In this document: positions 62 to 55,376 of the stretch, one piece after another | How the letters are laid out: each line of letters opens with the position of its first letter | Numbering within the stretch: the stretch's first letter is position 1 | Assembly (NCBI RefSeq): GCF_006345805.1 | Contig: NC_043000.1 | Coordinates: forward strand, 102,610,001 to 102,674,000 | DNA length: 64,000 nucleotides | Source: Octopus sinensis | Taxonomy: Eukaryota | Direction of reading: 5' to 3' | Notes under the pieces: model-generated | Database searches by the model: none | Told to the model about the DNA's origin: nothing | The model's input: the letters and a program-made list of their open reading frames with translations, nothing else | Translations under genes and position numbers: made by a program

Positions 62-495
62 CAGGCGCAGGCGTAACTGTGTGGTTAGTTGCTTTCTTCC
101 TGACGACATGGTTTCAGGTTCAGTCCAACTGCGTGGAACCTTGGGCAAGTGTCTTCTACTATAACCTCGGGCAGATTCTGGCCTTGTGAGTAGATTTAGT
201 AGATGGAAAGTGAAAGAAGCTTGTCGTATGTGCATGTGTGTGTGTGTGAGCGAGTGTGAGTGTGTGTGAGTGTGCACGCGTGCGTTTTTATGTCATTGAT
301 TGTCCCTCATCACCGCTTGACAACGGGTGCTGGTTTGTTTATGCCACCGTAACTTAGCGGTCTGGCAAAAAGAGACCAACAGAATAAGTATCAGGCTTAA
401 AAAACAAGTACTGGGGTCGATTCATATGAGTAAAATTTCTTCAAAGTGGTGCCCCAACATGGCCACTGTCTAATGACTGAAACAGGTAAAAGATA
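62..495 (+). mobile_element. tRNA-derived SINE family A, near full length, diverged
   Basis: tRNA-like head (ggcgcaggcgtaactgtgtggtt ... ggttcagtcc), ccttgggcaagtgtcttctactata body, internal (TG)n, 3' tail ...atgactgaaacaggtaaaag. The same layout recurs more than 15 times in the window. Confidence 0.85.
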
Positions 496-2239: not shown

Positions 2240-2458
2240 ACAAGAGTTAAGGAATGGAACTACATATGTTTCGTAGGGAGCAGAAGTGTTGACATGTACC
2301 TTCTTACGACAATATAATCTTCATTTAATCAAGATACCTTTGGCCTGAAGAGTAGCCTGCTTTATACACCTCGCTTGGATATTTACCACTTCCGAGGTTC
2401 CGCTCGCTATGAAACATATGTAGACTGGATCTTATCAACTCCATTCCTTAACTCTTGT
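2240..2458. repeat. foldback element: 19-bp perfect outer inverted repeat plus a 22-bp inner inverted repeat (2 mismatches); probable inverted partial PLE terminal repeat
   Basis: acaagagttaaggaatgga (2240-2258) vs tccattccttaactcttgt (2440-2458); ctacatatgtttcgtagggagc (2260-2281) vs gctcgctatgaaacatatgtag (2402-2423). Confidence 0.85.
2331..2433 (+). ncRNA. candidate type I hammerhead ribozyme with palindromic helix III
   Basis: CTGAAGA 2345-2351; stem II GTAGC/GCTAT (G.U closing pair); GAAA 2411-2414; ACATATGT palindrome; GUA site with predicted cut after 2422; interrupted helix I (aagat-cc/ggatctt). Confidence 0.6.
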
Positions 2459-3064: not shown

Positions 3065-3210
3065 TATAAAACATTGTTTTTTTTTTCCAGCTTACTATAC
3101 TTCGATACGGAAACACTCCACAACCTTCCGCCTCAGTAAACAACTATTGTTCTTGAAAGTTGTCTTTTATATATTTTACTGTTTACTTGAAGCTAATCTA
3201 TATATATATA

Positions 3211-3266
<56 letters not shown>

Positions 3267-3354
3267 GAAATTTACAGAAAAACAAATGATGAAGACAGGT
3301 GTATAAACAACAAGCAAGTGTATTAGTTCAACGCCCGGGAAAGTGAGAAAGTTT

Positions 3355-3388
3355 TTTTACGTTTCGAGCCTACGCTCTTCAGCAGAAA
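3355..3388 (-). ncRNA. hammerhead-like motif with variant core (CUGCUGA)
   Basis: ttt CTGCTGA A GAGC-gtag-GCTC GAAAC GTA aaa; A6 is not conserved. Confidence 0.4.
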
Positions 3389-3948
3389 GGAACATGAGGA
3401 AATAAACAGAAAGAATAAAAAAAGCAACTTTGGGAGCTAGTGGTCAATCATAGTGGCTGACTGGACAGAGGTAGCTAGACAGGAGAGCTAGGAAGAAGGG
3501 GAGATAATAAAGTACTGGTGATCCCAAAACGAAGGTCCGCGTACGTGTGTATGTGACAGTGTGTAAGTGTGTGCGTGTGAATAGGGGCTGGTGACTTCGA
3601 CGTGTAGATGTCTGCGTATATGTGTGCGTCTATAATATGATGGTGTGTGGATGATGGTGTGGGTGCTGGGAAGTGGTCAGTGCTAGTGTAGTGTGATGTA
3701 GTGTGGTGGTGTGTGGTGTGGCATGATGTAGTGTGGTGATACGAAGGTGGGGTATGGGGATGTGTGGGTGGAGTGGGGTGGTGGGGTTGGGATGTGTAGG
3801 GGTGGGCTATGGATGGAGGGGTAACGATTAAGGGAGAAGGTGGGTAGGAGTGAAGAGAGGAATTAGTTGTCAGGGCAAAAGAGGAGAGGTGGGTGGCAAT
3901 GCAGAGAGGAAGTAGGTGTGAGATGAAGAGAGGAGAGGAGGGGAGTCA

Positions 3949-4327
3949 GATGAAGCGGGGAGGGGAATTGAGTCCATGTGGCGCAAAAGAATGAAGAGAG
4001 AAGATTAATTTTTGTTCACGGCGAAGGCGGGAGTCAGGATGGCCCCTGTGCAAAAGACAATCCAAACACAGACAAGTTTTGTAATGAATGACTGGTAGAG
4101 CGGAAATGGCGTGAGACCAGGGTGTCGTTGACGAGTCTAATGTTTCGGAGGTGCTCCGTGAACCGGTCAACCAAACGGTGTCCTGTTTGACCGATGTGCA
4201 GAGAAGGACAGAAAGAGCAGGAGATGCAGTAAATGACGTTGCTAAAAGTGCGTGTAAAGGAGTCAGTAATGGGTACCTGTGAGGATGGTGGTGTCGGAAA
4301 GGTAGGGGCAAGTGCGGCAGCGTGGGC
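3949..4327 (-). pseudogene. frameshifted PLE GIY-YIG endonuclease domain
   Basis: Manual translation across frames: RPRCRTCP / FSNVIYCISCSFCPSLHIGQTGHRLVDRFTEHLRNI...VSRHFRSTSHSLQNLSVFGL / RLRREQKLIFSLHSFAPHGLN. Confidence 0.85.
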
Positions 4328-4472
4328 GGATGCATGTATGCGCGCGTGTGTGTTTGTGTCAATATCGGTGTGTATGTATATGGCCAGACTTGAACAATCA
4401 ACCTGAGTGAACGAAGCATATTAGCTACTTCATTGCGCTGTGGTTTCTAAAACAAGTACTGGTAATATAATC

Positions 4473-5040
4473 ACAGGCGTGGCTGTATGGTCAAACGGTT
4501 CACATAGTAATCGTTTGCTTCGAGGTTCGGTTCCATTTCGAAGCACCTCGGACAAGTGTCTTCTACTACAGCCACGAGCTGAGCGAAATTTAGTAAGCAG
4601 AGACAATATGAAAAGACATAGATAGCTTTATAAACTATTGATAAATTTCTCACTAACTGCTTTATCTTTTACTCGCTTCAGTCATTAGATTGCGGCCATA
4701 CTGAAGCATCGCCTTCAAATGAATCGACCTCAGTATATAGGCTTGGAAACAGGGAATGCAACGCACCCCCAACAATTTTGAAGGTGCAGTGAAAACGCTG
4801 GGTTCCTGGACCTGGACTTGCACTTCCAAAGCAAACTTCGTTCCCGCACTCATGCCCAAGTACTTATTTTTTAAAACCTGATACTTAGTCTATCGGTCAC
4901 TTTTGCCGAACCGCGATATTATGGGGACGTAAACACCAACACTGATTGTCAATTAGATGGCGGCCATACTGGGCACCCCCTTAAATGGTTTTTAATCGAG
5001 CAAATCAACTCCCGGTACTTATTTTTAAGCCTGGTCTTTA
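4473..5040. mobile_element. fragments of SINE family A in both orientations
   Basis: Plus-strand head 4473-4590; minus-strand 3' parts 4660-5040. Confidence 0.7.
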
Positions 5041-12132: not shown

Positions 12133-12432
12133 CATATATATATACAGTGTATATAATTTGAGGGAATATTATTCATAACTTACAGGGAAAAATTCAATTT
12201 AGAAATACTAATTCAAATTCACGAAATATAATATATATATATATATAACATTAGAAAAAAACACCTTTTATCAATTCAAAATGAACAATTAAATTACACC
12301 ATCTAGAAAATTACATATAATAGAATATTAAATATAAAATAATAATACCGATGATTAAGTAATGTGCAAAATAATAATAATAAATCGTTTATATCATGAA
12401 TGATAAAAGGTGTTTTTTTTCTAATTTATATA

Positions 12433-12463
<31 letters not shown>

Positions 12464-12850
12464 CAGTCTTTTCTGTTGCTTGACCATTAATACCTGCTAT
12501 ATCTCTCTCTCTTGCTGCCTTCGAAACACACTTCCACACATACATAGACGCACACACACATACATGAAAGCAATTTCTCACATTCAAACACTCTAGCACT
12601 CATTCTTAAAATAATTCAAATATAAACACCAGTCATACAGAATACATTCACACTCTTTGATTTTCCTGTACACCCCTTCTCCTAACCGGATTCTGACCTT
12701 GAACTATCTTAACGGACATTCTCGTCTGCTTTCACCCAGCGTGGCGTCAACGCATATAGATAGACAGTTTGTGCCATTTATTCCATGGGCTCCTCGTGAG
12801 CGTTTGTCGAAAAGCTTGCTGTGCATTTTGTTGAAGAATTAAGTTCCTGG

Positions 12851-12936
12851 ATTTTCCTGAAGAGAAGGCTGCAAAATGGACTCCTTATTCAATCCGAATT
12901 AGGGACTTTGCAGCCTTTGAAACATATGTAGAAAAT
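12851..12936 (+). ncRNA. candidate type I hammerhead ribozyme (31-nt loop II family, copy 1)
   Basis: attttc CTGAAGA GAAGGCTGCAAA [31 nt] TTTGCAGCCTTT GAAA CATATG T A gaaaat: 6-bp helix I, 12-bp stem II (G.U closing pair), ACATATGT palindrome, GUA cut after 12930, AATAAA just downstream. Confidence 0.8.
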
Positions 12937-13080
12937 AATAAAAAGGAATTTTGTTAAATCTTCGTTTCTTCCTACACTAAATATATATATATGAGGGCTT
13001 CGAATGTCCTGTCTGTGTTTGTTGTATCGTCTTCTAAGTTTTTATGCGTTCTTGTCTCAGTTTGTATTTTTCTACATATC

Positions 13081-13120
<40 letters not shown>

Positions 13121-13121
<1 letters not shown>

Positions 13122-13490
13122 CACACATGTGAGTGAGAACACTTTGAGATATTTTTGGTATCTAACATATGTCAGATACTGCGAGCGCTGCTTCTGATTG
13201 GTCAATCCATGGTCATGACCCGAGGTCACGGTGACAGCGCTGCTTCTGATTTGTCAATCCATGGTGATGACCCGACGTCACGGTGACGGCACTACTTTTG
13301 TCATTCATAAGTTACAACTAAACGTGAAGAATTTAGTTATCGGGTTAATAAAATATGGTCGTTTATTCGTGTGTAATAAATAAAATAAATACCAAACTCA
13401 TTCCCTATGGATACCGTATTTATTACAACTCGTTTACAAGCCACTCGTTGTAATAAATACGGTATCCATAGGGAACTCGTTTAGTATTCT
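13121..13490. mobile_element. non-autonomous repeat with a 52-bp tandem duplication and a terminal perfect 29-bp hairpin
   Basis: Tandem units 13184-13235 and 13236-13287; inverted repeat 13401-13429/13447-13475. Confidence 0.55.
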
Positions 13491-13746
13491 CTCTATATAT
13501 TCAGTCAAACTAATGCACCTGCTTGTTATTCCTGCACCTGTCTTCGTCTTTTGTTGTTTTCTGTAAATATATCCTTTTATATATGTGTGCTGCAAGATTC
13601 TTGATGTGAAACCGTGCGTTGAAACAGATATTGTTGTATTTCGAGATAGTTATTTTTTCCCTCTTTTTGCCAAATAAACAGGCGCACTATATAATTCCCT
13701 TTTCACTCATTTATTACTGTTCTTATTCTAATTTATGTTTATCGTC

Positions 13747-13785
13747 CGGAAATCTTTCGTCACACCTCTGTGAACTCTTCATCCG
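13747..13785 (-). ncRNA. degenerate hammerhead-like relic
   Basis: cgg ATGAAGA GT(T)CAC-agaggt-GTGAC GAAA GATTT ccg; C3 is lost and helix III is weak. Confidence 0.3.
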
Positions 13786-14446
13786 TCTTCGTATGTACTC
13801 TTGCTCCGCTTTTATACATATACACACATACGCGAGTAAATATACGGGTAAAACCCTTGTGGTATGCTATATAAAGCTCGTATAAAGTCTTACTCAAAGA
13901 AGGTGCATTTCACACCTTGAATTGGTGATAATGATTACACAACACCTCACCAATGAACAAGTGTAAAAATGTGTCGAAACAATTGTAATGTTTATAGATG
14001 CATGTATGTATGTATGTATGTATGTATGTGTGTATGTATATACTTACATATATATGTATATACATATGCATATATGAGTTCAGGACGTCACAGAAGGTAA
14101 ACAACAGGAAATACGAAATACGAAAATATGGAATACGAACTTTTTTGCGAACAGCGAAAGAAACAATATTATCGATAATGCCCGAAATTGCGTTTGACTC
14201 CTCTTGCTGATAACTGATGAAGAATTTGTGACCTTGTGTGTTTTCTGTTCGCCTGTGCATTTAGTATGTGTTCGTTTGTTTATTTACAATACGTTTATTT
14301 TTAATTATATATATATAGATATGTCATATTTTCCGTTTGTTGTCTTTTTATTTAATCCTGAAGATATTATTTATGTAACGCACGCACTCATTAATCTTTT
14401 ACCTATATATATATGTGTGTGCGTGTGTATGTGTGCGTGTGTGTGT

Positions 14447-14479
<33 letters not shown>

Positions 14480-14674
14480 TAGTTCAAATTTACAGAAAAC
14501 AAACGACGAAGACAGGTGAAAGAACAACAAGCAGAGTTTGAAGGTTTTTTAGTTATAGAAATCGACCCCAGGACTTACTCTTTGGAACCCTAGCACTTAT
14601 TCTATCGGTTTCTTTTTCCAAAACGCTAAGCTACGGGGACGTGTGTATATATATACATATATATACATATATAT

Positions 14675-14720
<46 letters not shown>

Positions 14721-15193
14721 CGTAAGGAGTGACTGTGTGACAAGAAGTTTGCTGCCTGGTCACTAGGTCAAATAGATTTGGACGATGGAAACTGAAAAAA
14801 GCCCGTCGTATATACGTGTTTGTGGGCCGGAGGGGGCTAGCTTCGTGCTTGTCCCAGACAACCGCTTGTTGACTTCCTTTCCATCCCCGCAACTTAGAAG
14901 TTCGACGAAATTAACCGATAGAATATGTCGAATGACTGAGACAAGTAAATGTTTTTTTTAGATATATCGTAGTAATATCTAATGTAGTTGTGGTTTACGA
15001 CCAGTCAGGACGTTACCATTGGTTTCACACTTTTTATACTCTTAGCAATATAGACGTCTCCCACGGCTAAGAAGGTAAAAGGCGCGAAAGCAATGGTGAC
15101 TCCCTGACAGGCCATACCAGCCACATAGTTTCGGGTTCATTCACACTGCGTGGCACCTTAGAACCTAGGGTTGGATTCAAAATTCTACCAGGA

Positions 15194-15235
15194 CACCTGA
15201 TGAAGGCTGGAGAGTAAATCAGCCGAAATTTTGTG
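15194..15235 (+). ncRNA. minimal PLE-type hammerhead with damaged helix III
   Basis: cac CTGATGA A GGCTG-gagagtaaat-CAGCC GAAA TTTT gtg; TTTT stands where CGTH is expected. Confidence 0.45.
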
Positions 15236-15825
15236 GTAGCAACAAACAAGATGAGGACAAATATCCGTCCAATGTAAAAAATGTAAATATTGTACAGAAT
15301 TCCTCATCTCTAAAATATAGAACAATTTATGATTGTTTCAAAAATTCCATGTTGACTTAATCTTGCATCGTGTTTTTAAACGACTCCACAATTAATGATG
15401 TAGTCATATCCGTTGTACAGATACCCCGTTCATAGAAATGATCCCTCGCAACTCTCTACAAAAAATAATATGCTGAAGTGTTTGTCTACCGCTTAAATAT
15501 AGGACATTAATCAATGTTTATAGTGGACGGCACAGCGGTCACGTTTATAAACATGATTGAAGATAAGTCAAGATGAATTTGTAGAAATAATTGTAAACTA
15601 TGAAACAAAAATAATAACGCAAACTCCACTTTTCAGTGCTTATTACTTCTGTAACCCCTCAGAGGAAACATGACTTCCTTCACTCCTCTCCACCCTTCAT
15701 TTATGGTTTGAGATATAATCATAATTGTTGTAAACTGGAATGGAACTTACTCTCTTTCTGCTCACATCCATTCACCATTTAATGCTACTTGCTTTGCATC
15801 TTTTAGAGAGATAGATTAGATATAA

Positions 15826-16221
15826 CTAGTAGTATCGCCCGGCGTTGCTCGGGTTTGTAAGGGAAATAACTATATAAACATTTTTAGAGAGTTATAGCCA
15901 AAAAATAGCAAAAAAATGCATTAAGAATGGAAAAAAATGATGGTAATTTTTTTTTAAATCGTTGACTCATCGTAGACATTTTTAGAGAGTTACTTCCCTT
16001 ATATAATATCGAAAAAATGCATTAAAATGGAAAAAAATGATGGTAATTTTTTTTTCAAATCGTAGACTCATCGTAGACGCGCGCTAATACCCAGAAGGGC
16101 TCGATATGAATCACGACTATAAGATACCCGGTTTTGGTTAAACTGCACCGCAAAGTGTGGGAGTAATTAGGAATCTAAATCGTAGGAGACAGACACACAA
16201 CTTCACTTTTATATATAAAGA
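15826..16221 (-). mobile_element. complete Helitron-like non-autonomous element (396 bp)
   Basis: On minus: a|TCtttatatataaaagtgaag ... CCCGagcaacgcCGGG hairpin ... actaCTAG|t, inserted between A and T. Confidence 0.8.
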
Positions 16222-16299
16222 TAAACTCAAAGAGCAACTAGAAAGTGAAAGTAGTTTCTAACTTAGGATGTCTCATAGATAGTGGTGGCAATGGTGTTG

Positions 16300-17405
16300 G
16301 AGGTGGTAGATGTGGTTATCATGGCAGTGGTGGTGTAGTGGATGTGTATGATGGCAGCAATTATAGTGTTGGTGTTTTTGTAGAGGTGGTGGTGGTGGTG
16401 GCGGCAGTGGATGATGATGATAATGATGATGATAGTAGTAGTAGCATTGATTATGTTAGGATGTCTCATGGATAGTAGAGTTGAAGACATTGCAGAGTGT
16501 AGTGGTGGTGAAATTAGTGATTTTGAATATGATGCTGGTATTGATCTTGGGGTTGTGGTTGCAGAAGATGGTTGTGGTGGTGGCATTCGAGGTTGTAGTA
16601 ATGGTTGTAGTGGTGGTTGTGAAGATGATTCTGATATTGATAGTCTTTGCATTGAGGTGGTGGCAGAGTCAGAGTAAATAATAAGAGCCCAGTTAACACA
16701 AGATTCTTAAATTTCGGAGTTCATAAGATAGAGAGCAAGAAGTTAAAAGTTCCAATACTGGCCCGATACCTATACCCCATATTCTTCAACTATTTTATAA
16801 GAAAGGGGTTAATGGCAGGATAGGGATTCAGCTTTAAAATAAATTGTATAACAAAAAATACATAAATAAATTACTGCTCCAACAATGTAATTTTAGTATG
16901 TGTGTATGTATGTATGTGTGTGTTTAAGCAATGCAAACAATGGAAAATAATTTAAACACTCATTTTCTGATGTCTAAGGATGGATATTTATGCGTATGAA
17001 TCTTTTTATTTTTATTTTCTTTGAAATATAATTCTAGGGAACTGAAAAAGCTATGTACGATGCCAAGTGAATTTAGCTATTTACGATGAGCGGATGTTTA
17101 CGTTACAAACGAATCTGTAGGTCTAGTTACATGTTTACGTTAACTACGTCACAAAATAGCTGTTTACGTCACAGTAACAATATTTTGAGAGGCAGTAAAT
17201 AATATGAGGTCGAAAGAAAGAATATCATTGGTTACAATTCGAATTATTAAACAACGTTAAACTTAGAAATTACAATTCCGTTTTCATTTTGGGTTACAAT
17301 TATGTCTTCTTTTGACACATTCTACCAGTATACGAAGTTTCAAATTGTTTAGTTAACTAAGAAAATCTGGCCTTCAAACTGAAAAGATCCAATAATTTTC
17401 CCTTA
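16300..17405 (-). mobile_element. second, inverted copy of the 9123-10055 element
   Basis: 17125-17370 vs 9160-9405: 9 mismatches in ~245 bp by manual comparison; 16306-16478 matches 9762-9945. Confidence 0.7.
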
Positions 17406-17473
17406 TGAGGTTTTTCACGCTAGCTACTTGATAAATTCTTATAAAGATTTTACCCTATTTTTAAATATATATA

Positions 17474-17507
<34 letters not shown>

Positions 17508-17519
<12 letters not shown>

Positions 17520-20500
17520 GCATCCTTTTTGTCTCGGGAGACAATGGAGTTGCGCATAAAATAATCTAGTCCGGCTTTTACATTTCATGTCCTAATACAT
17601 CTCCTGCTCTGGCTGTGTAGTCCTATCCTGGACAAACACTCCCTCTGGCAGGTACCGCAAATGTAGCGAAGACTGTTCCTGGCTAGTTGTAATGCCATAG
17701 TTTCTTGTTGACGTCTCTTCTTGTCTTTCCATTTTTCCTCTCTCTCTCTCTCTGTCACTCCTTTGTATTCCCTCTTTTACGATGCGTCGCCAATCTCCAC
17801 GGTTGGCGGCAACTGCCTCTCAACCGCTAATATTGATGTTGCAGGCCTTCATGTCCCTTTTGCAAACATCCTTGTAACGTAAGAACGGTCTACCCACAGA
17901 CCTAGTACCCCAAGCAAGCTCTCCGTAGAGTATGTCCTTGGGGATTCTGCCATCTTTCATACGGCTAACATGCCCAAGCCATCTCATACGTCTTTGTGTG
18001 AGGAGTGCAAACATGCTTGGTATTCCTGCTTGCCTGAGGACATCTTTGTTGGGGATATGATTCTGCCATTTGATGCGGAAGATTTTCCGGAGGCAGCGCA
18101 GGTGAAAGATGTTTAGGCGACGCTCTTGGCGTGTGTATAGCGTCCAAGTCTCACTTCCATACAGTAGAGTGCTAAGTACACATGCCTGGTAGATCTTCAT
18201 TTTCGTGGTCTTGGTCAGCTAATTGTTGTCCCAAGCCCGTTTGGAGAGTTGGGCCATCGCAGCAGCTGCCTTGCCAATGCGTATATTGAGCTCAGCGTCA
18301 AGGGATAGGTTGTAGGTGACGGTAGAGCCAAGATAGGTAAACTTCTCCACCTCTTGTAATCTGTGGTCTCCAATATGTATGTTTGGGATGTCCGATGTAG
18401 CCTGACCCATGATGTTGGTCTTCTTAAGGCTGATAGCTAAGCCAAAGTCGTTACATGCTTGCTCAAAACAGTTAATGAGCCTTTAGAGGGCTTCTTCTGT
18501 GTGTGATACCAGAGCGGCATCATCAGCAAATAGCATCTCCTTGATCAGGACGTTTCTGATTTTGGTCTTGGCACGCAGGCGCGAGAGATTGAACAGTTTC
18601 CCGTCACTTCTACTGTGCAGAAACACTCCATCATCTGATGTCTGAAAGGCATGTGAGAGTAAGAGCGAGAAGAAGATGCCAAAAAATGTAGGAGCGAGGA
18701 CACAACCTTGCTTTACCCCGTTTTTTATTTGGAAGGCGACTGATGTTGAACCATTGTGCTGTATGGTGCCTTGCATGTCTTCATGGAAAGACTTGATGAT
18801 CCTCAGCAGCTTTGGTGGACATCCGATCTTTTGGAGCAGGATGAAGAGGCCTGTTCTGCTTACCGAGTCAAAAGCATTTGTTAGATCGATGAAGGCCATA
18901 TATAATGGCATTTTCTGCTCTCTGGACTTCTCATGAAGTTGGCGTATGGAGAATATCATATCGATAGTTGATCTGCTTCTTCTAAAGCCACACTGCGATT
19001 CCGGATAGATTCGAGAATCAAGTAGTTGTAGCCTGGCCAGGATAACGCGGGCAAAGGTCTTTCCAACAGTGCTTAGAAGAGATATTCCACGGTAATTGTT
19101 ACAATCACCACGGTCACCTTTGTTTTTGTAAAGCGTAATGATGTTGGCATCCCGCATATCCTGAGGGACTGTACCCTCTTCCCAGCACTGACACAGAAGC
19201 TCATGAAGGTGCCGAAGCAGGATGGTGTTTTTGCCGGCTTTGATGATCTCTGAGGGGATGCCGTCTTTTCCCGGAGCCTTGTTTCTTGCTAGGGAGTCAA
19301 CAGCCTTGGTGAGCTCTGCTATAGATGGCGGACTGTCAAGTTCGCACATGACTGGCAAGATCTTGACACTCTCGACTGCAGCCTCAGCCACTGTAATCTC
19401 TCGTGAGTAGAGATCCTGGTAGTGCTCCACCCATCTATCCCTTTGCTTGCTTTGATCCCTGGTGAGATCTCCAGTAGTTGATTTCAGAGGGGCTGACTTG
19501 GTTGCGGATGGACCGAGGGCCTTCTTCAAACCGGCATACATCCCACGGGTGTCGCCCCTGTCAGCAGCTGACTGGATACTCTGACAGATTTCCTGCCAAT
19601 ACCTGTTTGCACAGCGTCTCGCTGTCAGTTGGGTTTTATTTCGTGCTTTTCTGAGTTCTTCGAGTGACTGTGTAGAAGAGTCACTCTTGTATTGCATCAG
19701 AGCTGCACGCTTTGCTTCGATAACTGGCTCCAGCTCTGAGAGCCCAGCATTGAACCAATCTGGGTTTTGCCCTTCTCTCATGCCGAAAGTATCTATTGAT
19801 GTCGTATACAAAGCTTCCCTGATATGGTTCCACCTACTTTCAGCAGAGGAGGTTGGGCAGTTACTGAGGGCAACCTTGATAAAAGCAGCAAAACATTTTC
19901 GCAGTGTAGGGTCCGAGGTTCTGGCAGTGTTAATGCGTGGTCGGCCCACTTCCTTGGAGCGATGGACTTTTTTAGGCAGAATCCTCACCCTACTTCTAAT
20001 TAGTAAGTGGTCTGTGTCACAATCCACGCTGTGGTAACTGCGGGTTAATAGAATAGAATTCAGAAAGGATCTCCGTGTAATTATGAGATCCAGCTGATGC
20101 CAGTGGTGAGATCTTGGATGTCTCCAAGATGCCTTGTGGGATGGCTTGTTGGTAAAGAATGTGTTTGTGATGCACAGGTTATGGTATGTGCAGAATTCGA
20201 GTAGTCTCTGACCATTGTCATTCATGTTGCCAATACCAAAGTGTCCAACACAAATGGGCCACGAATCATGGTCAGATCCCACGCGAGCGTTAAAATCCCC
20301 TAGAAGGTAGATATTTTCAGTCGTTGGTATATTTTCTATGACACAGTTGAGATCTTTGTAGAACTGGTCCTTGGTCTCCTCTGAGCTGTAGAGAGTGGGA
20401 ACATAGATGCTGAGTAGATGTACTGAGACAGAAGAAGTCGAGAGGTGCAGTGAGAGGATACGCTCAGTGCCTCCTGATGGTGGTTCTATTGAGGAGAGTA

Positions 20501-20885
20501 ATGAGTTTCTCACTGCAAAGCCAACGCCATGTTGACAAGGTTCTTCTGGATCGCTTCCCTGCCAAAAGAAGGTGAAATCCTGCTCTTTGAGTTTGCCGTT
20601 TGAGGGAAGTCTTGTTTCCTGTAGCCCAGCAATGTCTATGTTGAGCCTCTTTAGTTCACGGTCAATGATGGCCGTTTTCCTTGTGTCTTCAACCCTGAGT
20701 AGATCATCAGATATTCCAGGGAACATGGTCCTGACATTCCAGCTTGCCAACCGCAGGACTGGTGGTTTCTTGACTTTTAGTTGTTTGCCTGGTGCAGAGG
20801 TTGCAGGCCGCTTTTCAAGTCATACTCTTAGCTCCAAGCACCCAATGAAGCAGGCGGCCTGTGGCGGGTCATCACCTTATTAACT
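17508..20885 (-). mobile_element. near-full-length RTE-clade LINE
   Basis: APE endonuclease plus RT ORF, C-terminal Cys/His motif, 3' end ccattgtctcccgagacaaaaaggatgcc(aac)n abutting (TA)n; no clear TSD. Confidence 0.95.
17585..20750 (-). pseudogene. RTE APE endonuclease-reverse transcriptase ORF (~1050 codons), disabled
   Basis: Motifs WNVRT, GLQETR, GDFNARVG, DTDH, YRGISLL, QCGFR, FIDLTNAFDSV, GVKQGCVLAP, LFADD, YLGS, WLGHV, CGTCQRECLSRIGLHSQSRRC. In-frame stops at 18483-85, 18219-21 and 17820-22; frameshift in the (GA)n tract at ~17738-17752. Confidence 0.95.
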
Positions 20886-20964
20886 ACTATACATAAATGC
20901 CTCATTTTACACCTCCCCCCCACACACACACAAAAGCACACATACATATATAATAGATATATAT

Positions 20965-21167
20965 AAGGGACAACTGACGAAGGGAATGTTCTTTTTGTTG
21001 CCTGTCTCGTTTCCCTATTTGTTTCTTTCGTTGTTCGAAAAAGAAGTTCGTTTTCCATGTTTTTGTTTTTTATGTTCCCGTTTCTCATTTTGTTCAAGTT
21101 TTTTTTGACGTACTGTACCCATATATGCATGTATACATACATGTATATGTATATATATATGCATACA

Positions 21168-21203
<36 letters not shown>

Positions 21204-21214
21204 TATATATTATA

Positions 21215-21276
<62 letters not shown>

Positions 21277-21810
21277 TATTATATGATCGAACGCCACGCA
21301 TCCATTTCCGGATCAGTTTTATCTTAATTTAGATGCGCACTCTACAGCCTATCTCTATTCTATCTCCTTCTCTTGTTCTTCTTCCTTTCTGTTTTTCTCT
21401 CCCACCCTTTCTCTAATTCTTCTCCTTTCCCCTTCACCGTTCCCTCTCTCTCCCTCACTCTACCGCTTTGACTCTCTCGTTGCTCACACGTGACCAACGG
21501 TTATCTATCTTTCTTCCACTTCCTAAAGACAAGAGATGCCTTTGCCTGTCTCTTCCCAAAGCTCTTCCTTCGCAAAAATTTGCTTTGCGAGAAGGACTGT
21601 TTTAAGGAAGTCGCGTCTTGTCCCTACGTTCGAAACGCGGAGTAGATAAAACAGGAGAAAATAGATGACGGAAATGTTCTTTATGTTGCATGTCTCGTTT
21701 CTTTATTTGTTTCTTTCGTTGTTCGGAAAGAAAAGTTCGTTTCCATGTTTTTGCTTTTTATGTTCTCGTTTCTCATTTTGTTCACGATTTTTTACGTCCT
21801 ATACCCATAT
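20965..21810 (+). repeat. two copies of a T-rich dispersed repeat (20965-21120, 21660-21810) with a pyrimidine-rich spacer; possibly PLE terminal-repeat derived
   Basis: tgtctcgtttc...tttctttcgtt(g)ttcg...gttcgtttt?ccatg...gacgt(a/c)ct(g/a)tacccatat in both; inverted partial copies at ~14065-14170 and ~27020-27100. Confidence 0.5.
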
Positions 21811-21893
21811 ATGCCTGCATATATATGCATATATATGTAGGTATGTACATATATGTATGTATATATGCATGTATGTATGTATTTATATATATA

Positions 21894-21972
<79 letters not shown>

Positions 21973-22019
21973 GTGAATTGAAGAAATGGAGCTGAACGAA
22001 GATTGAACAGAAATCGTTT

Positions 22020-22112
22020 TATTTCATTCTACACGTGTTTCGAAAGGCACAATTTACCAAAATCCGATTGAATAATGAGACCATATTGTGTCTTTCTCTT
22101 CAGGAAGAAATA
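22020..22112 (-). ncRNA. candidate type I hammerhead ribozyme (31-nt loop II family, copy 2), fully canonical core
   Basis: tatttcttc CTGAAGA GAAAGACACAAT [31 nt] ATTGTGCCTTTC GAAA CACGTG T A gaa(t)gaaata: 9-bp helix I with one bulge, stem II 11/12 bp with G-C closing pair, ACACGTGT palindrome, GUA cut between 22030 and 22029. Confidence 0.85.
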
Positions 22113-22525
22113 GGAAATCCGTTGGAAAAAACAAAAACAGAACAGAGGCGGAGCAAAACAAATCAAACTAGGCTCCTAAGAGCCCATGGCAAAACTGTTT
22201 ATCAGTGCATGTTGAGAACCGGTGGTTGAAGATTTTAACGGGTCAGGCAGCGGTCATTCCTGTGGGTGAGGGTGTGTAGATGTTCTTAGTGACCGAGAAT
22301 AAAGTTCTGAATAAAGTTCTGACTATGGGGGCACCAAAATCTTTTAAGTGCTTAGGACCTCGATGGGTCTTAATCTGGAACTGAACGCGCACTTCATATT
22401 CGAGGCTTTGATGAAGCTAAATGATGTTATTGAGGCACTCTGAAGTTCACTGCATCATATAGCAGAAACAACTGGAAGCTAATGAAGTTCATGATACAAC
22501 CCTTGTTTTTCTTGCATCATCTCTT

Positions 22526-22559
<34 letters not shown>

Positions 22560-22572
22560 TGTGTGTGTGTGT

Positions 22573-22626
<54 letters not shown>

Positions 22627-24097
22627 TGTGTGTGTGTGTTTGAATTTGACACCTACCACCATTTGACTAGTGTTGCTTTGTTTATGTCCCCGAAACCTAC
22701 GCAGTAAGGCAAAAGGGGTCGACAGAATAAGTATGACACCTAAAGAAACAACAACAACAACAAAAATAACTATTAAAATCTTCAAAGTTATGCCCCAGCA
22801 TGGTCGCAGTTCGTTAATTGAAATAAATAAAACATGAAAAATAAAAGATATCTGAAAAAAATAAAGATAAAAAAAACAAACAGCCATAGCTAGAACACTG
22901 TTTAGAACACCACCAGAAATGAAAATATTCAAGCCTTTACCACCGACTGCAGTTCAGACTGAACGTTGTTTTTTTTTTTGTTTTTTTAGGGGGTGGATTA
23001 AAAAAAAGCCTATAAATTATATAGCACCAGTGGTTTCTCCATATTTTCACTGTCAAATGACACATAATGTGTTCAAATTAAACTGTCTCAGTTTACAAAC
23101 AAAATCATGCAAACACACACACACATACCACATACATACATACATACATACATACATACATACATACATACATACATACATACATACATACATACATGCA
23201 CTGCAAAAACACAGACTCACACAAGGTCATACACATTACTTCTCTTTATTTCTTCCCAGCTTCTCATTCACTCGCACTGAGTTACAGAAATTCACACACA
23301 TACACACACTCTCACACGCACATACATGTATGTATGTATGTATGATTGTATGTATGTATGTATGTATGTATGTATGTATGCATGTATGTAGGTATGTATG
23401 TATGTATGCATGCATAGTCATACCTACACATGTGTGCCCCCAACCCGAACTTGTTTCGTCATACCTTTCAGAAAAAGAGATATTTTTTGATGAAATTTTC
23501 CACAAATACGCGTTCGATGGTACAGATTACGACCATATCGGAATCTAATATGAAAATATTTACTACCACTGGTGTGGGGAATTTCGGAAAATCCACACGA
23601 ACCGGCTTTGTTTTCTTCATATGTTTCAGAAAAATGGGTGATTTTTTAAATGAAATTTTCAACAAATAATTTTCAGAGTGTGTAGAATAAGGATTATATC
23701 AGAATTTGGTATGGAGGTAATTTATGGACTCCTATACGTACATACTGACACACGTAACAATTTCTCTTCGAAATTTTGTAGATATATGTCTTGTGTGTTT
23801 GATGAAAGAGACTGGTAGGATAAATATCGGGCTATAAAATGTACAGGGGTCAATTAATCTAACAAAAATTCTTCAGTCGAATGAATGAAACAAGTAAAAA
23901 CTAAAAGACAATGGCCGCAATCAAATGACTGAAACAAGTAAAAGAATATAATATATACATATATATATATATATATATGTGTATATATTATATTCGTTTA
24001 CTTGTTTCAGTCAAATGACTGAAACAAGTAAAAGAATATAATATATACGACGGGCTTAACAAGTAAAAGAATATAATATATACATATATATATATAT

Positions 24098-24159: not shown

Positions 24160-24690
24160 TTCTTTTACTTGTTCAGTCATTTGATTGCGGCCATGCTGGA
24201 GCACCGCCTTTAGTCCAACAAATCGACTCCAGGACTTATTCTTTGTAAGCCTAGTACTTATTGTATCGGTTTCTTTTGCTGAACCGCCAAGTCACAGGGA
24301 CGTAAACACACCAACATGGGTTGTCAAGCGATGGTGAGGGACAAAAGCAGACACACACAAATATAACGAGTGGTTGTGAGGTAAGAAGCTTGCTTCTCAA
24401 CCACATGGTTCCGGGTTCACTCCCACTGCGTAGCACGTTGGGCAAGTGTCTTCTACTATAGCCTCGGGCCGACCAAAGCCTTGTGAGTGGATTTGGTAGA
24501 CGGAAACTGAAAAAAGCCTGTCGTATATATATATATATATATATACGAGTGTGTTTGTTATTTGTATCTGCATTTGTCCCCCTACCCATCATACTTGACA
24601 ACCGATGCTGGTGTGTTTGCGTCCCCGTAACTTAGCGGTTCGGTAAAAGAGACCGATAGAATAAGTAGTCGGATTATAAAGAATAAGTCT
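24160..24690. mobile_element. SINE A 3' half (minus, 24160-24360) fused to a SINE A copy (plus, 24365-24690)
   Basis: Both segments match family A; the arrangement creates a ~150-bp inverted repeat. Confidence 0.8.
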
Positions 24691-24699
24691 TGGGGTCAA

Positions 24700-24965
24700 A
24701 TTTGAACTCAGAACGTAAAGATAGACGAAATACCTGTTTCTATTTCTTTACTACCCATAAGGGGCTAAACACAGAGAGGACAAACAAACGGATTAAGTCG
24801 ATTATATCGACTCCAGTGCGTAACTGGTACTTATTTAATCGACCTCGAAGGGATGGAAGGCAAAGTCGACCCCGGCGGAATTTGAACTCAGAGCGTAGCG
24901 GCAGGCGAAATACCGCTAAGCATTTCGCCCGGCGTGCTAACGATTCTGCCAGCTCGCTCACCGCC
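24700..24965 (-). mobile_element. tRNA-derived SINE family C
   Basis: Reverse complement of ggcggtgagctggcagaa(t/a)cgttagcacgccgggcg...gttcaaattccgccg...gcctttcatcctttcggggtcgataaa. Confidence 0.85.
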
Positions 24966-25533
24966 CTTTTGTCATCGAAAGATATTGTTCGTTCTTTTGC
25001 TGACAGGTGGTTCTATTTGACGGCACTCCGTCGGTTACGACGACAAGAGTTTCAACAGAATAGCCTACTCATGAAATTAATGTGCAAATGGTTGAGTACT
25101 CCACAGACACGTTTTTTTGCCAGCTGAGTGGACTGGAGTGGCGTGCAATGAAGTGTCTTGCCCAAAGGCACAACGAGCCACCTATTTTCGAACTCACAAC
25201 CTTACGATCGTGTGCCGAATGCTCTAACCACTGAGTCACACACTTTCTATTATTCACAGATGAAACTCACTCCAAAAAGTGACCACCGATTTTTTAAAAA
25301 ATTTCGGATATCATTATCCAATGTATCTTCGCTTAGTTTTTAGAGCTAGCTGGGCGAGATTAGTAACATTTTGGGTAATATTTCTTGCAAATCGATAAAC
25401 TGTTTCGAAGTAGCATGATTTGACTGCTTATAGATTAGTTATAGTGAATGAAGGATGAGTCGGTGCGTTGTAACATTTTAATCTATTCTCCAAATTCAGT
25501 TATTTCTACGTTTTTCTTATTTTTTGCTTTTCC

Positions 25534-25569: not shown

Positions 25570-26035
25570 TTATTTATTTTGAATAACTGAATGTTCTATT
25601 TTTAGTCTTCAGCATGTTTATCTGAATAAAGTCACAGACTTGCAGTCTTCTCTCTGCTAATTATTAGTTTATCACTAGAATTCTGGCAACATATATCTAT
25701 TGTGTATATATATACCTATATATACATGATTGCATATGCATGTGTTTGTGTGCATGTCTATGTTTGCATATGTACTTAAACATGCATGCATACAATTATA
25801 TTGCCTATGTATTTATAGTACATAAGCATATGTATATACACATATGTAAATGTATGCATGTCATTATTCAGTTTATTTCAAGGTTTCTTGCCAACAGAGT
25901 AAGAACCGGTTTCTAACCTAGATCCAAGGCTCCTTCATTGTAGGTATGTATGTATGTATGTATATGTATATGTGTATTTGTGAGTGTGTTTGTGTGTGCG
26001 TGTATATATCTATGCTATACATAGATATGTATGAA

Positions 26036-26232
26036 GGCGGTGAGCTGGCAGAAACGTTAGCGCGCCGGGCGAAATGCTTAGCGGTATTTCGTCTGTCGTT
26101 ATTACGTTCTGAGTTCAAATTCCGCCGACGTCGACTTTGCCTTTCATCCTTTCGGGGTCGATAAATAAAGTACCAGTTTCCCACTGGGGTCGATGGTATC
26201 GACTTAATCCCTTTGTCTGTCCTTGTTTGTCA
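26036..26232 (+). mobile_element. SINE family C
   Basis: Head ggcggtgagctggcagaaacgttag (A-box-like), gttcaaattcc (B-box-like). Confidence 0.85.
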
Positions 26233-28539: not shown

Positions 28540-29288
28540 CATTTAATATGCGCAGCTCAGGTACAAGAGTTGACGAATAACTATGTGAAATGCAGAATCG
28601 ACAACATTACCGACAGCAACATATACACAACAGAATGTGTGATGAGAGGGGTGAAAAATCACCCCTCTCACCGTACAACGGTATGGCACATCCCTTGCTA
28701 ATGCCCAAAATACAAAAGACGACATGACAATGTAGCAAGAGTGATCCATTTGGGAGTTCTGTGGAAATCACGGCCTACAAAGAGTAAAGATGTGGTATGA
28801 CCAAACTCCGGAAGGAATCACTAACAATAAAAACTGCAAAATATTGTAGGATGTAATGATTCAGTGCGATCACCTGACCTGGCATCGGAAACCAGACACT
28901 GTTGTGGTGAAAAAAACCCCAGAAACATGCATGATTATTAACATAGCATGTCCAGGTGACAACATGATCAAAGAGAAAGAAAAAGAAAAACTGAACAACT
29001 TCGACGATTTGAAGTGGGAAATACGAAGGCTGTGGTCAATGAGGAGAGCAGATGCGGTACAAATAGTAATTGGTGCACTTGGAAGTATCAGCATTCAACT
29101 ACCAACAAAAAGAGTGGTACAAATGTAAAGTTAGAACACCTACAAATGTCAGCATTGCTTGGAACTGCAAGAATTCTTCGCAGGGTTCTTGAAGCATGAC
29201 TAGTAAACAAGTGTCACCTTAATCTGCTGGCTGTGGACAGCTAACACTTTCTATCATACTCAGCAAAATAGGCTGTGAGTTTTCATCA

Positions 29289-29374: not shown

Positions 29375-29585
29375 TCTCTACTATAGGTACAAGGTCTGAA
29401 ATTTCGGAGGAGGGGACTAGTCGATTACATCGACCCCAGTGTTTCACTCGTACTTAATTTATCGATCCCGAAAGGATGAAAGGCAAAGTCGACCTCGCCG
29501 GATTTCGAACTCAGAACGTAGCGACGGGAGAAATACTGCTAAACATTTCGCCCGGCATGCTAATGATTCTGCCAGCTCACCGCCT

Positions 29586-29648
<63 letters not shown>

Positions 29649-31384: not shown

Positions 31385-31799
31385 CCTTTCTTTTACTTTC
31401 TTTTATTCTTTTACTTGTTTCAGTCATTTGACTGCGGCCATGCTGGAGCACCGCCTTTAGTCGAGCAAATCGAACCCGGGACTTATTCTTTGTAAGCCCA
31501 GTACTTATTCTATCGGTCTCTTTTGCCGAACCGCTAAGTGACGGGGACGTAAACACACCAGCATCTGTTGTCAAGCAATGCTAGGGGGACAAACACAGAC
31601 ATACAAACACACACACACACACACATATATATATACATATATACGACAGGCTTCTTTCAGTTTCCGTCTACCAAATCCACTCACAAGGCATTGGTCGGCC
31701 CGGGGCTATAGCCGAAGACATTTGCCCAAGATGCCACGCAGTGGGGCTGAACCCGGAACCATTTGGTTGGTTAGCAAGCTACTTACCACACAGCCACTC
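31385..31799 (-). mobile_element. SINE family A, full length, young
   Basis: Close reverse-complement match to 43574-43996. Confidence 0.9.
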
Positions 31800-32043
31800 A
31801 TGATGATGATGATGATGGTAATAATAATAATAATCCTTTCTACTAGAGGCACAAGGCCTTAAATTTTGGGGATGGGGACTAGTCGGTTATCTCGACCCCA
31901 GAGTTTAAATGGTACTTATTTTATCGACCTCAAAAGGACGAAAGGCAAAGTCAACCCCCGCAGAATTTGAACTCAGGGCGTAAAAACAAGAAATGTCGCT
32001 AAGTATTTTGCCTGGGTTGCTAACAATTTTGCCAGCACACCTC

Positions 32044-32153: not shown

Positions 32154-32625
32154 TATTACTTTTGATCCGCATCTTTGTTACAGTCACTAGACAAGACACA
32201 CCCAGCATCCTGGGACGAGTGAAGGATAAGAGATGTTGCAATATAACTGAATGCTTTGGAAGGGGAGGTAGTGAGATATCTTTATGTAATATAACACAGA
32301 CATTTAAATGGATAGGGTTTTTCTAAGGATGTAGGCAGTATTTGTCAGTACAATTTTTTGGATTTCTCTGAGACATGGTTATCTTGGGATGTTATCGAGA
32401 TATTCTGACATCCCGTTTTTATCATACTTATGGCACCTACAATAACAGGAACAGTTCTCGTTTTAAGATGCCCACATCTTTTGAATTTCAATTTCCAGGT
32501 CCTTATATTTAGTTTGTCAAATTCCTTGACAGATGTATTTTTATCAGTGGGAACACTTACATCTATTAGTGTACAAATATTTTCTTTACTTATTATGTCT
32601 GGTTGGATGGAAGAGGCTTAATAGC
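32045..32625 (-). mobile_element. R4/Dong-type LINE 3' fragment with (TAA)n tail
   Basis: QPDII..CTLIDVSVPTDKN.SVKEFDKL / YKDLEIEIQKMW / TVPVIVGAI / LREIQKIVLTNTAYILRKTLSI* (stop 32304-32306). Confidence 0.8.

Positions 32626-55343: not shown

Positions 55344-55376
<33 letters not shown>

What the first reader, a model, noticed from the sequence alone, without database searches (positions are those of the whole stretch)
12851..22112. A hammerhead-ribozyme family with compensatory covariation: two copies (12851-12936 plus, 22020-22112 minus)
Seen in sequence: both copies have the same architecture, helix I / CUGAAGA / 12-bp stem II / exactly 31-nt loop (atggactccttattcaatccgaattagggac vs atggtctcattattcaatcggattttggtaa) / GAAA / 8-nt perfect palindrome / GUA / helix I / AATAAA. 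The paired bases differ but pairing is kept: stem II GAAGGCTGCAAA:TTTGCAGCCTTT vs GAAAGACACAAT:ATTGTGCCTTTC; helix III ACATATGT vs ACACGTGT. Both share upstream sequence (acagttt..tgcc..ccatgggctc) and end in (TA)n. Established: PLE terminal repeats and retrozymes carry type I hammerheads with short palindromic helix III that can work as dimers. Inference: a structurally constrained, non-coding, self-cleaving element family with an unusually long stem II and large loop II that may supply tertiary contacts. I do not know whether it has been described in cephalopods.
Basis: partly seen in the sequence, partly recalled or inferred. Interest (0 to 1): 0.88.

Follow-up and report, generated by a model that had tools for sequence, protein, structure and literature searches.

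The report
Hammerhead ribozyme motifs in retrotransposon tails
Three scattered relics of a mobile-element family each carry a hammerhead self-cleaving RNA motif of the kind known from Penelope-like retrotransposons, unusual only in its very long second helix; this is a fairly ordinary find.

Summary
Both copies have a complete type I hammerhead layout at the stated coordinates. My descriptor scan finds exactly these two; none of 200 shuffled windows gave a motif as good.

I found a third, more diverged copy outside the finding (2339-2428 +). Next to it lies an inverted, 5'-truncated partial copy (about 2300-2240 -).

Across the three copies 86% of proposed pairs form, against 30-46% when partners are slid. 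Nine pairs change on both sides, six of them in helix II.

Rfam Hammerhead_1 aligns full length only when about 100 nt is searched, at 20.2 and 14.8 bits against a cutoff of 34. The 51-nt insertion in helix II explains the low scores.

The self-complementary 8-nt helix III, the position 50-62 nt from the 3' junction, the (TA)n flanks and the inverted truncated partner all match published Penelope-like element (PLE) or retrozyme hammerheads that act as dimers. A canonical PLE endonuclease remnant lies in the same window.

Best reading: solo, probably inactive relics of a PLE or PLE-mobilised element. Cleavage is untested. The tertiary-contact idea has no support. I could retrieve no copies from outside the window. 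This is a new member of a known kind, of modest interest.

The parts
12759..12980 (+). Copy 1: element body homologous to copy 2 (upstream block GATAGACAGTTTGTGCCAT, hammerhead, 3' tail). The whole insertion may be 12464-12980, bounded by (TA)n tracts at 12427-12463 and 12981-12992.
12851..12856 (+). Copy 1 helix I, 5' strand AUUUUC; pairs with 12931-12936.
12857..12863 (+). Copy 1 core box CUGAAGA (C3-A9).
12864..12918 (+). Copy 1 helix II domain, 55 nt: a 12-bp stem (12864-12875 with 12907-12918) closed by a 31-nt apical segment (12876-12906) that folds further.
12919..12930 (+). Copy 1: GAA (G12-A14), self-complementary helix III ACAUAUGU (12922-12929), and A17 at 12930. The predicted cut is after 12930.
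12931..12980 (+). Copy 1: helix I 3' strand GAAAAU (12931-12936), AATAAA (12937-12942), and the 3' tail up to the (TA)n junction.
21968..22203 (-). Copy 2: element body homologous to copy 1. It ends at the (TA)n tract 21884-21967. A (CA)n tract at 22525-22640 lies upstream.
22020..22112 (-). Copy 2 hammerhead. Helix I: 22112-22104 with 22029-22020 (one bulged U) or 22109-22104 with 22029-22024. CUGAAGA: 22103-22097. Stem II: 22096-22085 with 22053-22042 (one A.C). Apical 31 nt: 22084-22054. GAA: 22041-22039. Palindrome ACACGUGU: 22038-22031. A17: 22030.
2339..2428 (+). Copy 3, not in the finding. Helix I: 2339-2344 with 2423-2428, weak (4 of 6 pairs, two of them G.U). CUGAAGA: 2345-2351. Helix II domain: 2352-2410, 59 nt (basal GUAGC/GCUAU, internal loops, ACCUCG/CGAGGU). 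GAA: 2411-2413. Palindrome ACAUAUGU: 2414-2421. A17: 2422. The tail runs to about 2458.
2240..2300 (-). Copy 3': an inverted, 5'-truncated partial copy lying head to head with copy 3. It has the 3' half of the helix II domain, GAAACAUAUGUA (2272-2261), and a tail GUUCCAUUCCUUAACUCUUGU that ends in (TG)n. It lacks 15 nt that are present in the tail of copy 3.

Best explanation
These are old, solo 3'-terminal fragments of one retroelement family. The family is either a Penelope-like element (PLE) or a short non-autonomous element that PLEs mobilise (a retrozyme-like element). Each fragment was integrated into a microsatellite: (TA)n for copies 1 and 2, and (CA)n/(TG)n for the partial copy 3'. 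Each carries a type I hammerhead motif 50-62 nt upstream of its 3' junction.

Shown here:
- The full hammerhead core (CUGAAGA, GAA, A15.1-U16.1, A17) is intact in all three copies.
- Helices I and II are kept by compensatory changes.
- Helix III is an 8-nt self-complementary tract that cannot close as a hairpin. It changed from UA to CG in its centre without losing self-complementarity.
- The predicted lowest-energy dimer of copy 1 and of copy 2 is a double hammerhead with an 8-bp intermolecular helix III.

Inferred:
- In a transcript that holds two units, or in trans, two motifs pair through helix III and cut after GUA. That is after 12930, 22030 and 2422, leaving a 5'-OH on the following G. 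This would process the element RNA as proposed for PLE and retrozyme hammerheads.
- The long helix II domain (12 bp plus a conserved apical segment) most likely serves as a stable scaffold. It may also be a binding site for the element's protein, because the one PLE hammerhead tested with its own protein needed that protein to cleave. A loop-loop tertiary contact is less likely.
- At these three loci no same-strand partner is nearby, so the copies are probably inactive relics. The covariation then reflects selection on the active master copies.
For: Motif and statistics:
- Descriptor scan and shuffles.
- Rfam Hammerhead_1 aligns full length: 20.2 bits, E 0.006 for copy 1 and 14.8 bits, E 0.38 for copy 2.
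- Between copies 1 and 2, read by me from the invariant columns: core 13 of 13 identical, apical segment 24 of 31, stem II only 13 of 24.
- All 5 changed positions on the 5' strand of stem II face changed partners, and 4 of those pairs are compensatory.
- Three-copy count: 86.4% of cells paired against 30-46% slid; 9 pairs changed on both sides; 0 of 500 shuffles reach this.
- Dimer folds: -56.0 against 2 x -23.7 kcal/mol for copy 1, and -42.7 against 2 x -14.9 for copy 2. Both adopt the double-hammerhead topology.

PLE hallmarks:
- The 3' ends of copies 1 and 2 abut (TA)n. The chance for one random oriented end is 0.0099.
- An inverted 5'-truncated copy with a tail indel sits next to copy 3.
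- A canonical PLE endonuclease remnant lies at 4037-4420 (-). It has 1683 homologues, among them an 891-aa protein with RVT_1 followed by a C-terminal GIY-YIG domain.

Literature:
- PLE hammerheads are type I with a palindromic, minimal helix III and a longer helix II. They act as dimers and cleave poorly in vitro (PMC4209133, PMC6765202).
- PLEs carry the hammerhead near the 3' end, prefer (TA)n targets, and have inverted truncated copies and 30-40 bp tails (PMC8557442).
- The hammerhead of the Anolis element is protein-assisted, and reverse transcription starts just downstream of it (PMC11167929).
- Animal retrozymes derive from PLE terminal repeats (bioRxiv 10.64898/2026.07.22.740005).
Against: - No RT or endonuclease reading frame adjoins any of the three copies.
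- There is no tandem or same-strand partner hammerhead.
- The PLE remnant in the window has a different 3' region with no similarity to this family.
- Rfam scores are below the gathering cutoff, and nothing is reported when the whole window or 300 nt is searched.
- Pair 10.1-11.1 is G.U in copies 1 and 3.
- Copy 3 has a weak helix I, and its predicted homodimer is not a double hammerhead.
- There are only three copies, all from one window. No external copies could be retrieved.
- Cleavage is untested.
Confidence: 0.7

Rival explanations
1. The conserved long hairpin is mainly a 3'-end recognition structure for a reverse transcriptase, as in stringent LINE/SINE 3' tails that end in short repeats. 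The hammerhead core is then a non-catalytic relic or a coincidence, and selection acts on the stem-loop rather than on cleavage.
For: - The strongest covariation is in helix II (6 of the 9 covarying pairs).
- The apical segment is more conserved than the stem between copies 1 and 2.
- The motif lies 50-62 nt from a 3' end that abuts a simple repeat.
- PLE hammerhead cleavage was not needed for insertion in vitro, and cleaved ends were not seen in RNA-seq (PMC11167929).
- A LINE is present in the window.
Against: - All 13 core positions are intact in three copies that otherwise differ by about 30%.
- Helix I, which a simple 3' hairpin does not need, is complementary and covaries.
- Helix III keeps its self-complementarity through a double change.
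- Rfam Hammerhead_1 aligns end to end.
- The LINE in the window shares no sequence with the family.
Confidence: 0.2
2. The region is the C-terminal coding end of a transposon or host protein. Both copies are open in one frame (FLKRRLQNGLLIQSELGTLQPLKHM* and FLKRKTQYGLIIQSDFGKLCLSKHV*), stop at the same TAG, and are followed by AATAAA.
For: - The frame is shared and open, and several substitutions are conservative.
- Within the apical segment 6 of 9 substitutions fall on codon position 3. By my count the binomial probability is about 0.04 before correcting for three frames.
Against: - Upstream of FLKR the two frames are unrelated, and each is closed by a stop within 20-25 codons.
- Overall substitutions by codon position are 5/6/9, which is not significant.
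- Another frame is also open in copy 1.
- A search of 5.8 billion proteins found no sequence sharing words with either peptide.
- Coding selection does not explain compensatory changes in three helices.
- Copy 3 differs throughout the apical segment.
Confidence: 0.03
3. It is a chance resemblance in an AT-rich, repeat-rich genome.
For: - The core boxes are short.
- 22 CTGANGA sites occur in the window.
- Rfam scores are below the cutoff.
Against: - None of 200 shuffled windows gives a motif as good.
- Three homologous copies keep the motif and covary.
Confidence: 0.01

Closest known systems
Hammerhead ribozymes of Penelope-like elements (minimal or short-helix-III type I hammerheads; Cervera and de la Pena 2014, PMC4209133; Lunse, Weinberg and Breaker, RNA Biol, as cited in PMC6765202)
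   Same: Type I topology. Palindromic 15.x-16.x / loop 3 that implies dimer action. Helix II longer than canonical and helix I short. Many compensatory changes between copies. Found mostly as dispersed solo motifs from truncated elements, sometimes as close pairs on opposite strands.
   Different: The helix II domain is far longer: 12 bp plus a 31-nt apical segment, 55-59 nt in all, against 7-8 bp. [quoted passage not shown] G10.1 pairs with U in two of three copies. No RT/endonuclease reading frame or second terminal repeat is seen at these loci.
PLE insertion architecture (Craig et al. 2021, PMC8557442; Anolis Poseidon element, PMC11167929)
   Same: The hammerhead lies near the 3' end. (TA)n or other microsatellite targets. 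An inverted 5'-truncated copy adjacent to the element. Variable short tails at the end. A PLE endonuclease remnant is present in the same window.
   Different: Only terminal fragments are present. The PLE remnant in the window (3266-4446, minus strand) has an unrelated 3' region with only a core-like CUGAAGAG..GAAACGUA motif that no hammerhead model scores.
Animal non-LTR retrozymes (Cervera and de la Pena 2020, PMC7229834; Li, Clavereau and Pollet 2026 preprint)
   Same: Short, low-GC, non-coding elements carrying a type I hammerhead with a weak palindromic helix III. They are thought to be PLE-derived and PLE-mobilised.
   Different: Retrozymes are defined by tandem repeats of 170-400 bp. 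No tandem repeat is found here.
Rfam RF00163 Hammerhead_1
   Same: Full-length alignment of core, helix I and the zero-loop palindromic helix III.
   Different: Scores of 20.2 and 14.8 bits against a gathering score of 34. A 51-nt insertion sits where the model expects about 10 nt.

Membership tests
Hammerhead ribozyme, type I | Conserved core: C3 U4 G5 A6 N7 G8 A9, then G12 A13 A14, then A15.1-U16.1, then H17 (not G) | tested here: met
   Present and identical in copies 1, 2 and 3. H17 is A; GUA sites occur in natural hammerheads (PMC1636495).
Hammerhead ribozyme, type I | Three helices around the core in type I order, with helix I open | tested here: met
   Helix I has 6 bp in copy 1, 9 bp with a bulge in copy 2, and 4 of 6 pairs in copy 3. 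Helix III can form only between two molecules.
Hammerhead ribozyme, type I | G10.1-C11.1 pair closing helix II | tested here: inconclusive
   G-C in copy 2; G.U in copies 1 and 3 (pair 59-117).
Hammerhead ribozyme, type I | Helices supported by covariation | tested here: met
   Nine pairs changed on both sides; 86.4% of cells paired against 30-46% for slid partners; 0 of 500 shuffles reach this. Only three sequences, so power is limited.
Hammerhead ribozyme, type I | Reaches the Rfam RF00163 gathering score | tested here: not met
   No hit at gathering. 20.2 and 14.8 bits against 34. The long helix II insertion explains the shortfall.
Hammerhead ribozyme, type I | Mg-dependent self-cleavage 3' of H17 | not testable with these tools
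   Needs in vitro transcription of monomer and dimer constructs.
PLE-type dimeric hammerhead (PMC4209133) | Palindromic positions 15.2-16.2 and loop 3 | tested here: met
   ACAUAUGU in copies 1 and 3, and ACACGUGU in copy 2. The central pair changed UA to CG. The dimer fold forms an 8-bp helix III.
PLE-type dimeric hammerhead (PMC4209133) | [quoted passage not shown] | tested here: not met
   The G after CUGAAGA pairs with the base preceding GAAA in all copies.
PLE-type dimeric hammerhead (PMC4209133) | Lies in the terminal repeat of an element encoding RT plus a GIY-YIG endonuclease | tested here: inconclusive
   No such reading frame next to any copy. A PLE endonuclease remnant exists elsewhere in the window, but its 3' region is unrelated. 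Full-length family members could not be retrieved.
PLE insertion architecture (PMC8557442) | Microsatellite target, often (TA)n | tested here: met
   Copies 1 and 2 end at (TA)n. The chance per random end is 0.0099. Copy 3' ends at (TG)n.
PLE insertion architecture (PMC8557442) | Adjacent inverted 5'-truncated copy and a variable 30-40 bp tail | tested here: met
   Copies 3' and 3 lie head to head, with a 15-nt tail difference. Nothing comparable is seen at copies 1 and 2, although the tail of copy 2 has an 11-nt insertion relative to copy 1.
Non-LTR retrozyme (PMC7229834) | Tandem repeats of 170-400 bp, each with a hammerhead | tested here: not met
   No tandem or nearby same-strand second motif was found by BLAST, descriptor scan or covariance models.
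LINE/SINE 3' tail | 3' region shared with a partner LINE | tested here: not met
   No similarity to the LINE at 17595-20819 or to anything else in the window. LINEs elsewhere in the genome could not be tested.

The most novel reading that the evidence does not exclude
The 55-59 nt helix II domain may define a distinct hammerhead subclass that standard descriptors and the Rfam cutoff miss. If so, PLE lineages reported to lack canonical hammerheads could in fact carry working long-helix-II hammerheads. One example is the (TA)n-targeting Naiads, where 'half-core' cases with the two core boxes 35-50 nt apart were noted (PMC8557442). The conserved apical segment would then dock the element's own protein.
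Probability: 0.12. Interest if true: 0.55.

Novelty: new member of a known kind. Interest (0 to 1): 0.33.

Why it matters
It adds a covariation-supported hammerhead family, probably PLE-derived, in what looks like a SINE-rich and microsatellite-rich invertebrate genome.

The practical lesson is that hammerheads with a long helix II fall below Rfam's cutoff and outside common descriptors. Genome surveys may therefore undercount them and misjudge which retroelement lineages carry them.

If the apical domain proved to be a protein-binding site, it would bear on how protein-assisted PLE hammerheads work. As it stands, the find is an expected kind of element and the copies here are probably dead.

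Tried and rejected
- **Rfam:** at the gathering cutoff on the whole window, and at E<=10 on 300-nt stretches, there was no hammerhead hit. A hit appears only when about 100 nt is searched.
- **Public DNA collections:** a pattern scan of viral contigs found nothing. The metagenome scan gave 2 hits, both chance matches with no stem II.
- **Peptide search:** the open frame across the motif shares no words with any protein in the collection.
- **Harvesting more of the same genome through the LINE:** its best relatives are only about 70% identical. The two long contigs fetched share no DNA with the window and hold no motif.
- **PLE endonuclease remnant:** the word-index search found nothing. The full HMMER scan did find homologues, but those proteins cannot be used to fetch DNA.
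- **Sequence upstream of the motif:** the local alignment between copies 1 and 2 is not significant on score alone (26 against 19.3 +/- 2.4), though it lies at the same distance, 91-92 nt.
- **Possible upstream direct partial copy in copy 1** (TTGCTGCCTTCGAAACA, 12512-12528): not significant.
- **PLE remnant 3' region against copies 1 and 2:** only CA-rich low-complexity matches.
- **Covariance models from 2 and 3 copies:** no further copies in the window.
- **Supplementary files of the two key PLE papers:** not held.
- **Lunse et al.:** could not be read.
Full report
**Observation.** Copy 1 (plus strand) runs: helix I AUUUUC (12851-12856), CUGAAGA (12857-12863), a 12-bp stem II (12864-12875 with 12907-12918) enclosing 31 nt, GAA (12919-12921), the self-complementary octamer ACAUAUGU (12922-12929), A17 (12930), and helix I GAAAAU (12931-12936). 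AATAAA follows, and a 50-nt tail ends at a (TA)n tract. Copy 2 (minus strand, 22112-22020) has the same layout, with ACACGUGU as the octamer. Small corrections: stem II of copy 2 has one A.C mismatch; the core-proximal pair is G.U in copy 1; and the 31-nt 'loop' folds into a further stem whose register differs between the copies.

**Is it more than chance?** A permissive hammerhead descriptor requires the CUGANGA and GAA boxes and minimum helix lengths of I >= 3, II >= 3 and III >= 2. It finds exactly these two sites on both strands of the window. In 200 dinucleotide-preserving shuffles the loose motif occurs 0.27 times per window, and a motif as good as the weaker copy never occurs. Rfam reports nothing at the gathering score or when 300 nt is searched. 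When only about 100 nt is searched, Hammerhead_1 (RF00163) aligns end to end to both copies, at 20.2 bits (E 0.006) and 14.8 bits (E 0.38) against a cutoff of 34. The model has to absorb a 51-nt insertion in helix II.

**More copies.** BLAST and a covariance model built from the two copies found no further strong match. A relaxed core pattern then revealed a third copy at 2339-2428 (+): CUGAAGAG, a 59-nt helix II domain, then GAAAC AUAU GUA. Its upstream sequence and tail align with copies 1 and 2. An inverted, 5'-truncated partial copy lies head to head with it at about 2300-2240 (-). That partial copy keeps GAAACAUAUGUAG and the tail end CCAUUCCUUAACUCUUGU, lacks 15 nt of the tail of copy 3, and runs into a (TG)n tract. 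A three-copy model finds nothing else in the window.

**Covariation.** Between copies 1 and 2 the 13 core positions are identical and the apical segment is 24 of 31 identical, but stem II is only 13 of 24 identical (my count from the invariant columns). All five changed positions on the 5' strand of stem II face changed partners, and four of those pairs are compensatory. By my hand calculation, the coincidence of positions alone has a hypergeometric probability of 7/924. With three copies, 86.4% of cells form standard pairs, against 30-46% when the 3' partners are slid by 1-3 columns. Nine of 22 pairs change on both sides: six in helix II, two in helix I and one in helix III. None of 500 column shuffles reaches these values. 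Three sequences is a small sample, and the tool's own caveats about related sequences apply. Even so, the slid controls and the concentration of changes at paired positions make a structural constraint the straightforward reading.

**Helix III and dimers.** The octamer cannot close on itself as a hairpin. In copy 2 its central UA became CG, which preserves self-complementarity. A monomeric tetraloop would not need that; an intermolecular helix would. Co-folding two molecules gives a double hammerhead as the minimum-energy structure for copy 1 (-56.0 against 2 x -23.7 kcal/mol) and for copy 2 (-42.7 against 2 x -14.9), with intramolecular helix II and an 8-bp intermolecular helix III. Copy 3 does not behave this way and has a weak helix I, so it looks decayed.

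**What element is it?** The published picture of Penelope-like elements matches in several ways.
- Their hammerheads are type I, with a minimal palindromic helix III, a longer helix II and a short helix I. They are full of compensatory changes and are mostly found as dispersed solo motifs from truncated copies. They are thought to act as dimers and cleave poorly in vitro (PMC4209133, PMC6765202).
- The motif sits near the 3' end of the element. (TA)n is a preferred target. Inverted 5'-truncated copies and optional 30-40 bp tails are typical (PMC8557442).
- In the one element reconstituted in vitro, reverse transcription starts just downstream of the hammerhead, and cleavage needed the element's protein (PMC11167929).

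In this window the motifs lie 50-62 nt from their 3' junctions. Copies 1 and 2 both end at (TA)n. The window holds 127 tracts of (TA)>=5, covering 5.1% of it, and the chance that one random oriented end abuts a tract is 0.0099. Copy 3 has the inverted truncated partner with a tail indel.

PLEs are present in this genome. The reading frame at 4037-4420 (-) has 1683 homologues, including an 891-aa protein with RVT_1 followed by a C-terminal GIY-YIG domain. However, that remnant's 3' region is unrelated to the family studied here, and no RT or endonuclease frame adjoins any of the three copies. I therefore cannot say whether they are 5'-truncated PLEs or short non-autonomous derivatives. They are not retrozymes in the strict sense, because there is no tandem repeat.

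**Mechanism.** The hammerhead architecture and its evolutionary maintenance are shown. The rest is inferred. In transcripts that hold two units, or in trans, two motifs would pair through helix III and cut after GUA, processing the element RNA. The long helix II domain probably stabilises the fold and may bind the element's protein.

The apical segment starts 12 bp from the core while helix I is 6-9 bp long. From my own knowledge of the Schistosoma hammerhead structure, known type I contacts sit about 5-6 bp out on both helices. The apical sequence and fold of copy 3 also differ.

At these loci each motif lacks a same-strand partner. Copies 1 and 2 are 9 kb apart on opposite strands with a LINE between them. 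They are therefore most likely inactive relics.

**Rivals.**
- The hairpin could be chiefly a reverse-transcriptase recognition structure with a non-catalytic core. This cannot be excluded without a cleavage assay. The intact core in three copies that differ by about 30%, the covarying helix I and the maintained palindrome all argue against it.
- A coding reading arose because both copies are open in one frame and stop at the same TAG. The frames are unrelated upstream, codon-position bias is not significant (5/6/9), no protein shares words with the peptides, and coding selection would not produce the compensatory changes.
- Chance is excluded.

**Limits.** I could not identify the organism or retrieve any copy from outside the window. 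The covariation therefore rests on three sequences, and the autonomous partner is unknown.

**Verdict.** This is a new member of a known kind, the PLE/retrozyme-type dimeric hammerhead, notable for a helix II long enough to escape Rfam's cutoff and the usual descriptors. Interest is modest.

Noticed in passing
window 3266-4446, minus strand: Remnant of a canonical Penelope-like element. The GIY-YIG endonuclease frame at 4037-4420 reads ..VIYCISCSFCPSLHIGQTGHRLVDRFTEHL.., then a frameshift, with the stop near 3949. A roughly 680-nt CA-rich 3' region ends at the (TA)n tract 3199-3263. Pfam did not call the domain directly, but homologues have RVT_1 plus a C-terminal GIY-YIG. A SINE lies just upstream.
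   Followed up: yes
window 3382-3358 (-), about 26799-26776 (-), about 39397-39383 (-): A second 3'-region family, the one belonging to the PLE remnant, with a hammerhead-core-like string CUGAAGAGCGUAGGCUCGAAACGUA about 95 nt before its 3' junction. The CUGA box is intact only in the first copy (UCGAAGAG and GGGAGAG in the others). GAGC/GCUC would pair using G8 and A9, there is no convincing helix I or II, and no Rfam hammerhead model scores it.
   Followed up: partly
window 17595-20819, minus strand: A LINE with an AP-endonuclease and an RT (778-aa open frame, then further RT pieces in other frames). It lies between copies 1 and 2. Its best relatives in 5.8 billion proteins are only about 70% identical and come from amphioxus, gastropod and oyster records and from many unnamed ones.
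   Followed up: partly
for example window 5-292, 709-990, 1952-2165, 4480-4600, 14629-14910, 24254-24631, 31542-31859, 43557-43799, 55174-55440: Many copies, on both strands, of a SINE-like repeat. It is recognisable by the translated signature ..RRASFSFRLPNPLTRLWSARGYSRRHLPKVPRSGTEP..MWL..KLLTTQP.
   Followed up: no
window 24743-25012, 25922-26161, 29421-29600, 45699-45800, 46553-46840: A second repeated short element, with the translated signature ..GELAE.LARRAKCLAVFRLPLRSEFKFRRGRL...
   Followed up: no
whole window: Very rich in microsatellites: 127 tracts of (TA)>=5 cover 5.1% of the window. There are also long (CA)n, (ATAC)n-like and (GTAT)n-like arrays. The window is 65% A+T.
   Followed up: partly
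window 12512-12528, plus strand: TTGCTGCCTTCGAAACA lies inside the 5' part of the copy 1 insertion. It resembles the 3' strand of stem II plus GAAAC, about 400 nt upstream of the real one. It could be a trace of a partial tandem copy, but the score is within the shuffle range.
   Followed up: partly
window 28850-29125 (+) and 32348-32617 (-): Two open-frame fragments that look like pieces of one transposon protein family (..NIACPGDNMIKEKEKEKLNNFDDLKWEIRRLW..VIGALGSIS.. and ..IDVSVPTDKNTSVKEFDKL..VPVIVGAISMI..). Pfam gave no hit.
   Followed up: no
window 53430-53529: A run of 100 N, presumably an assembly gap.
   Followed up: no
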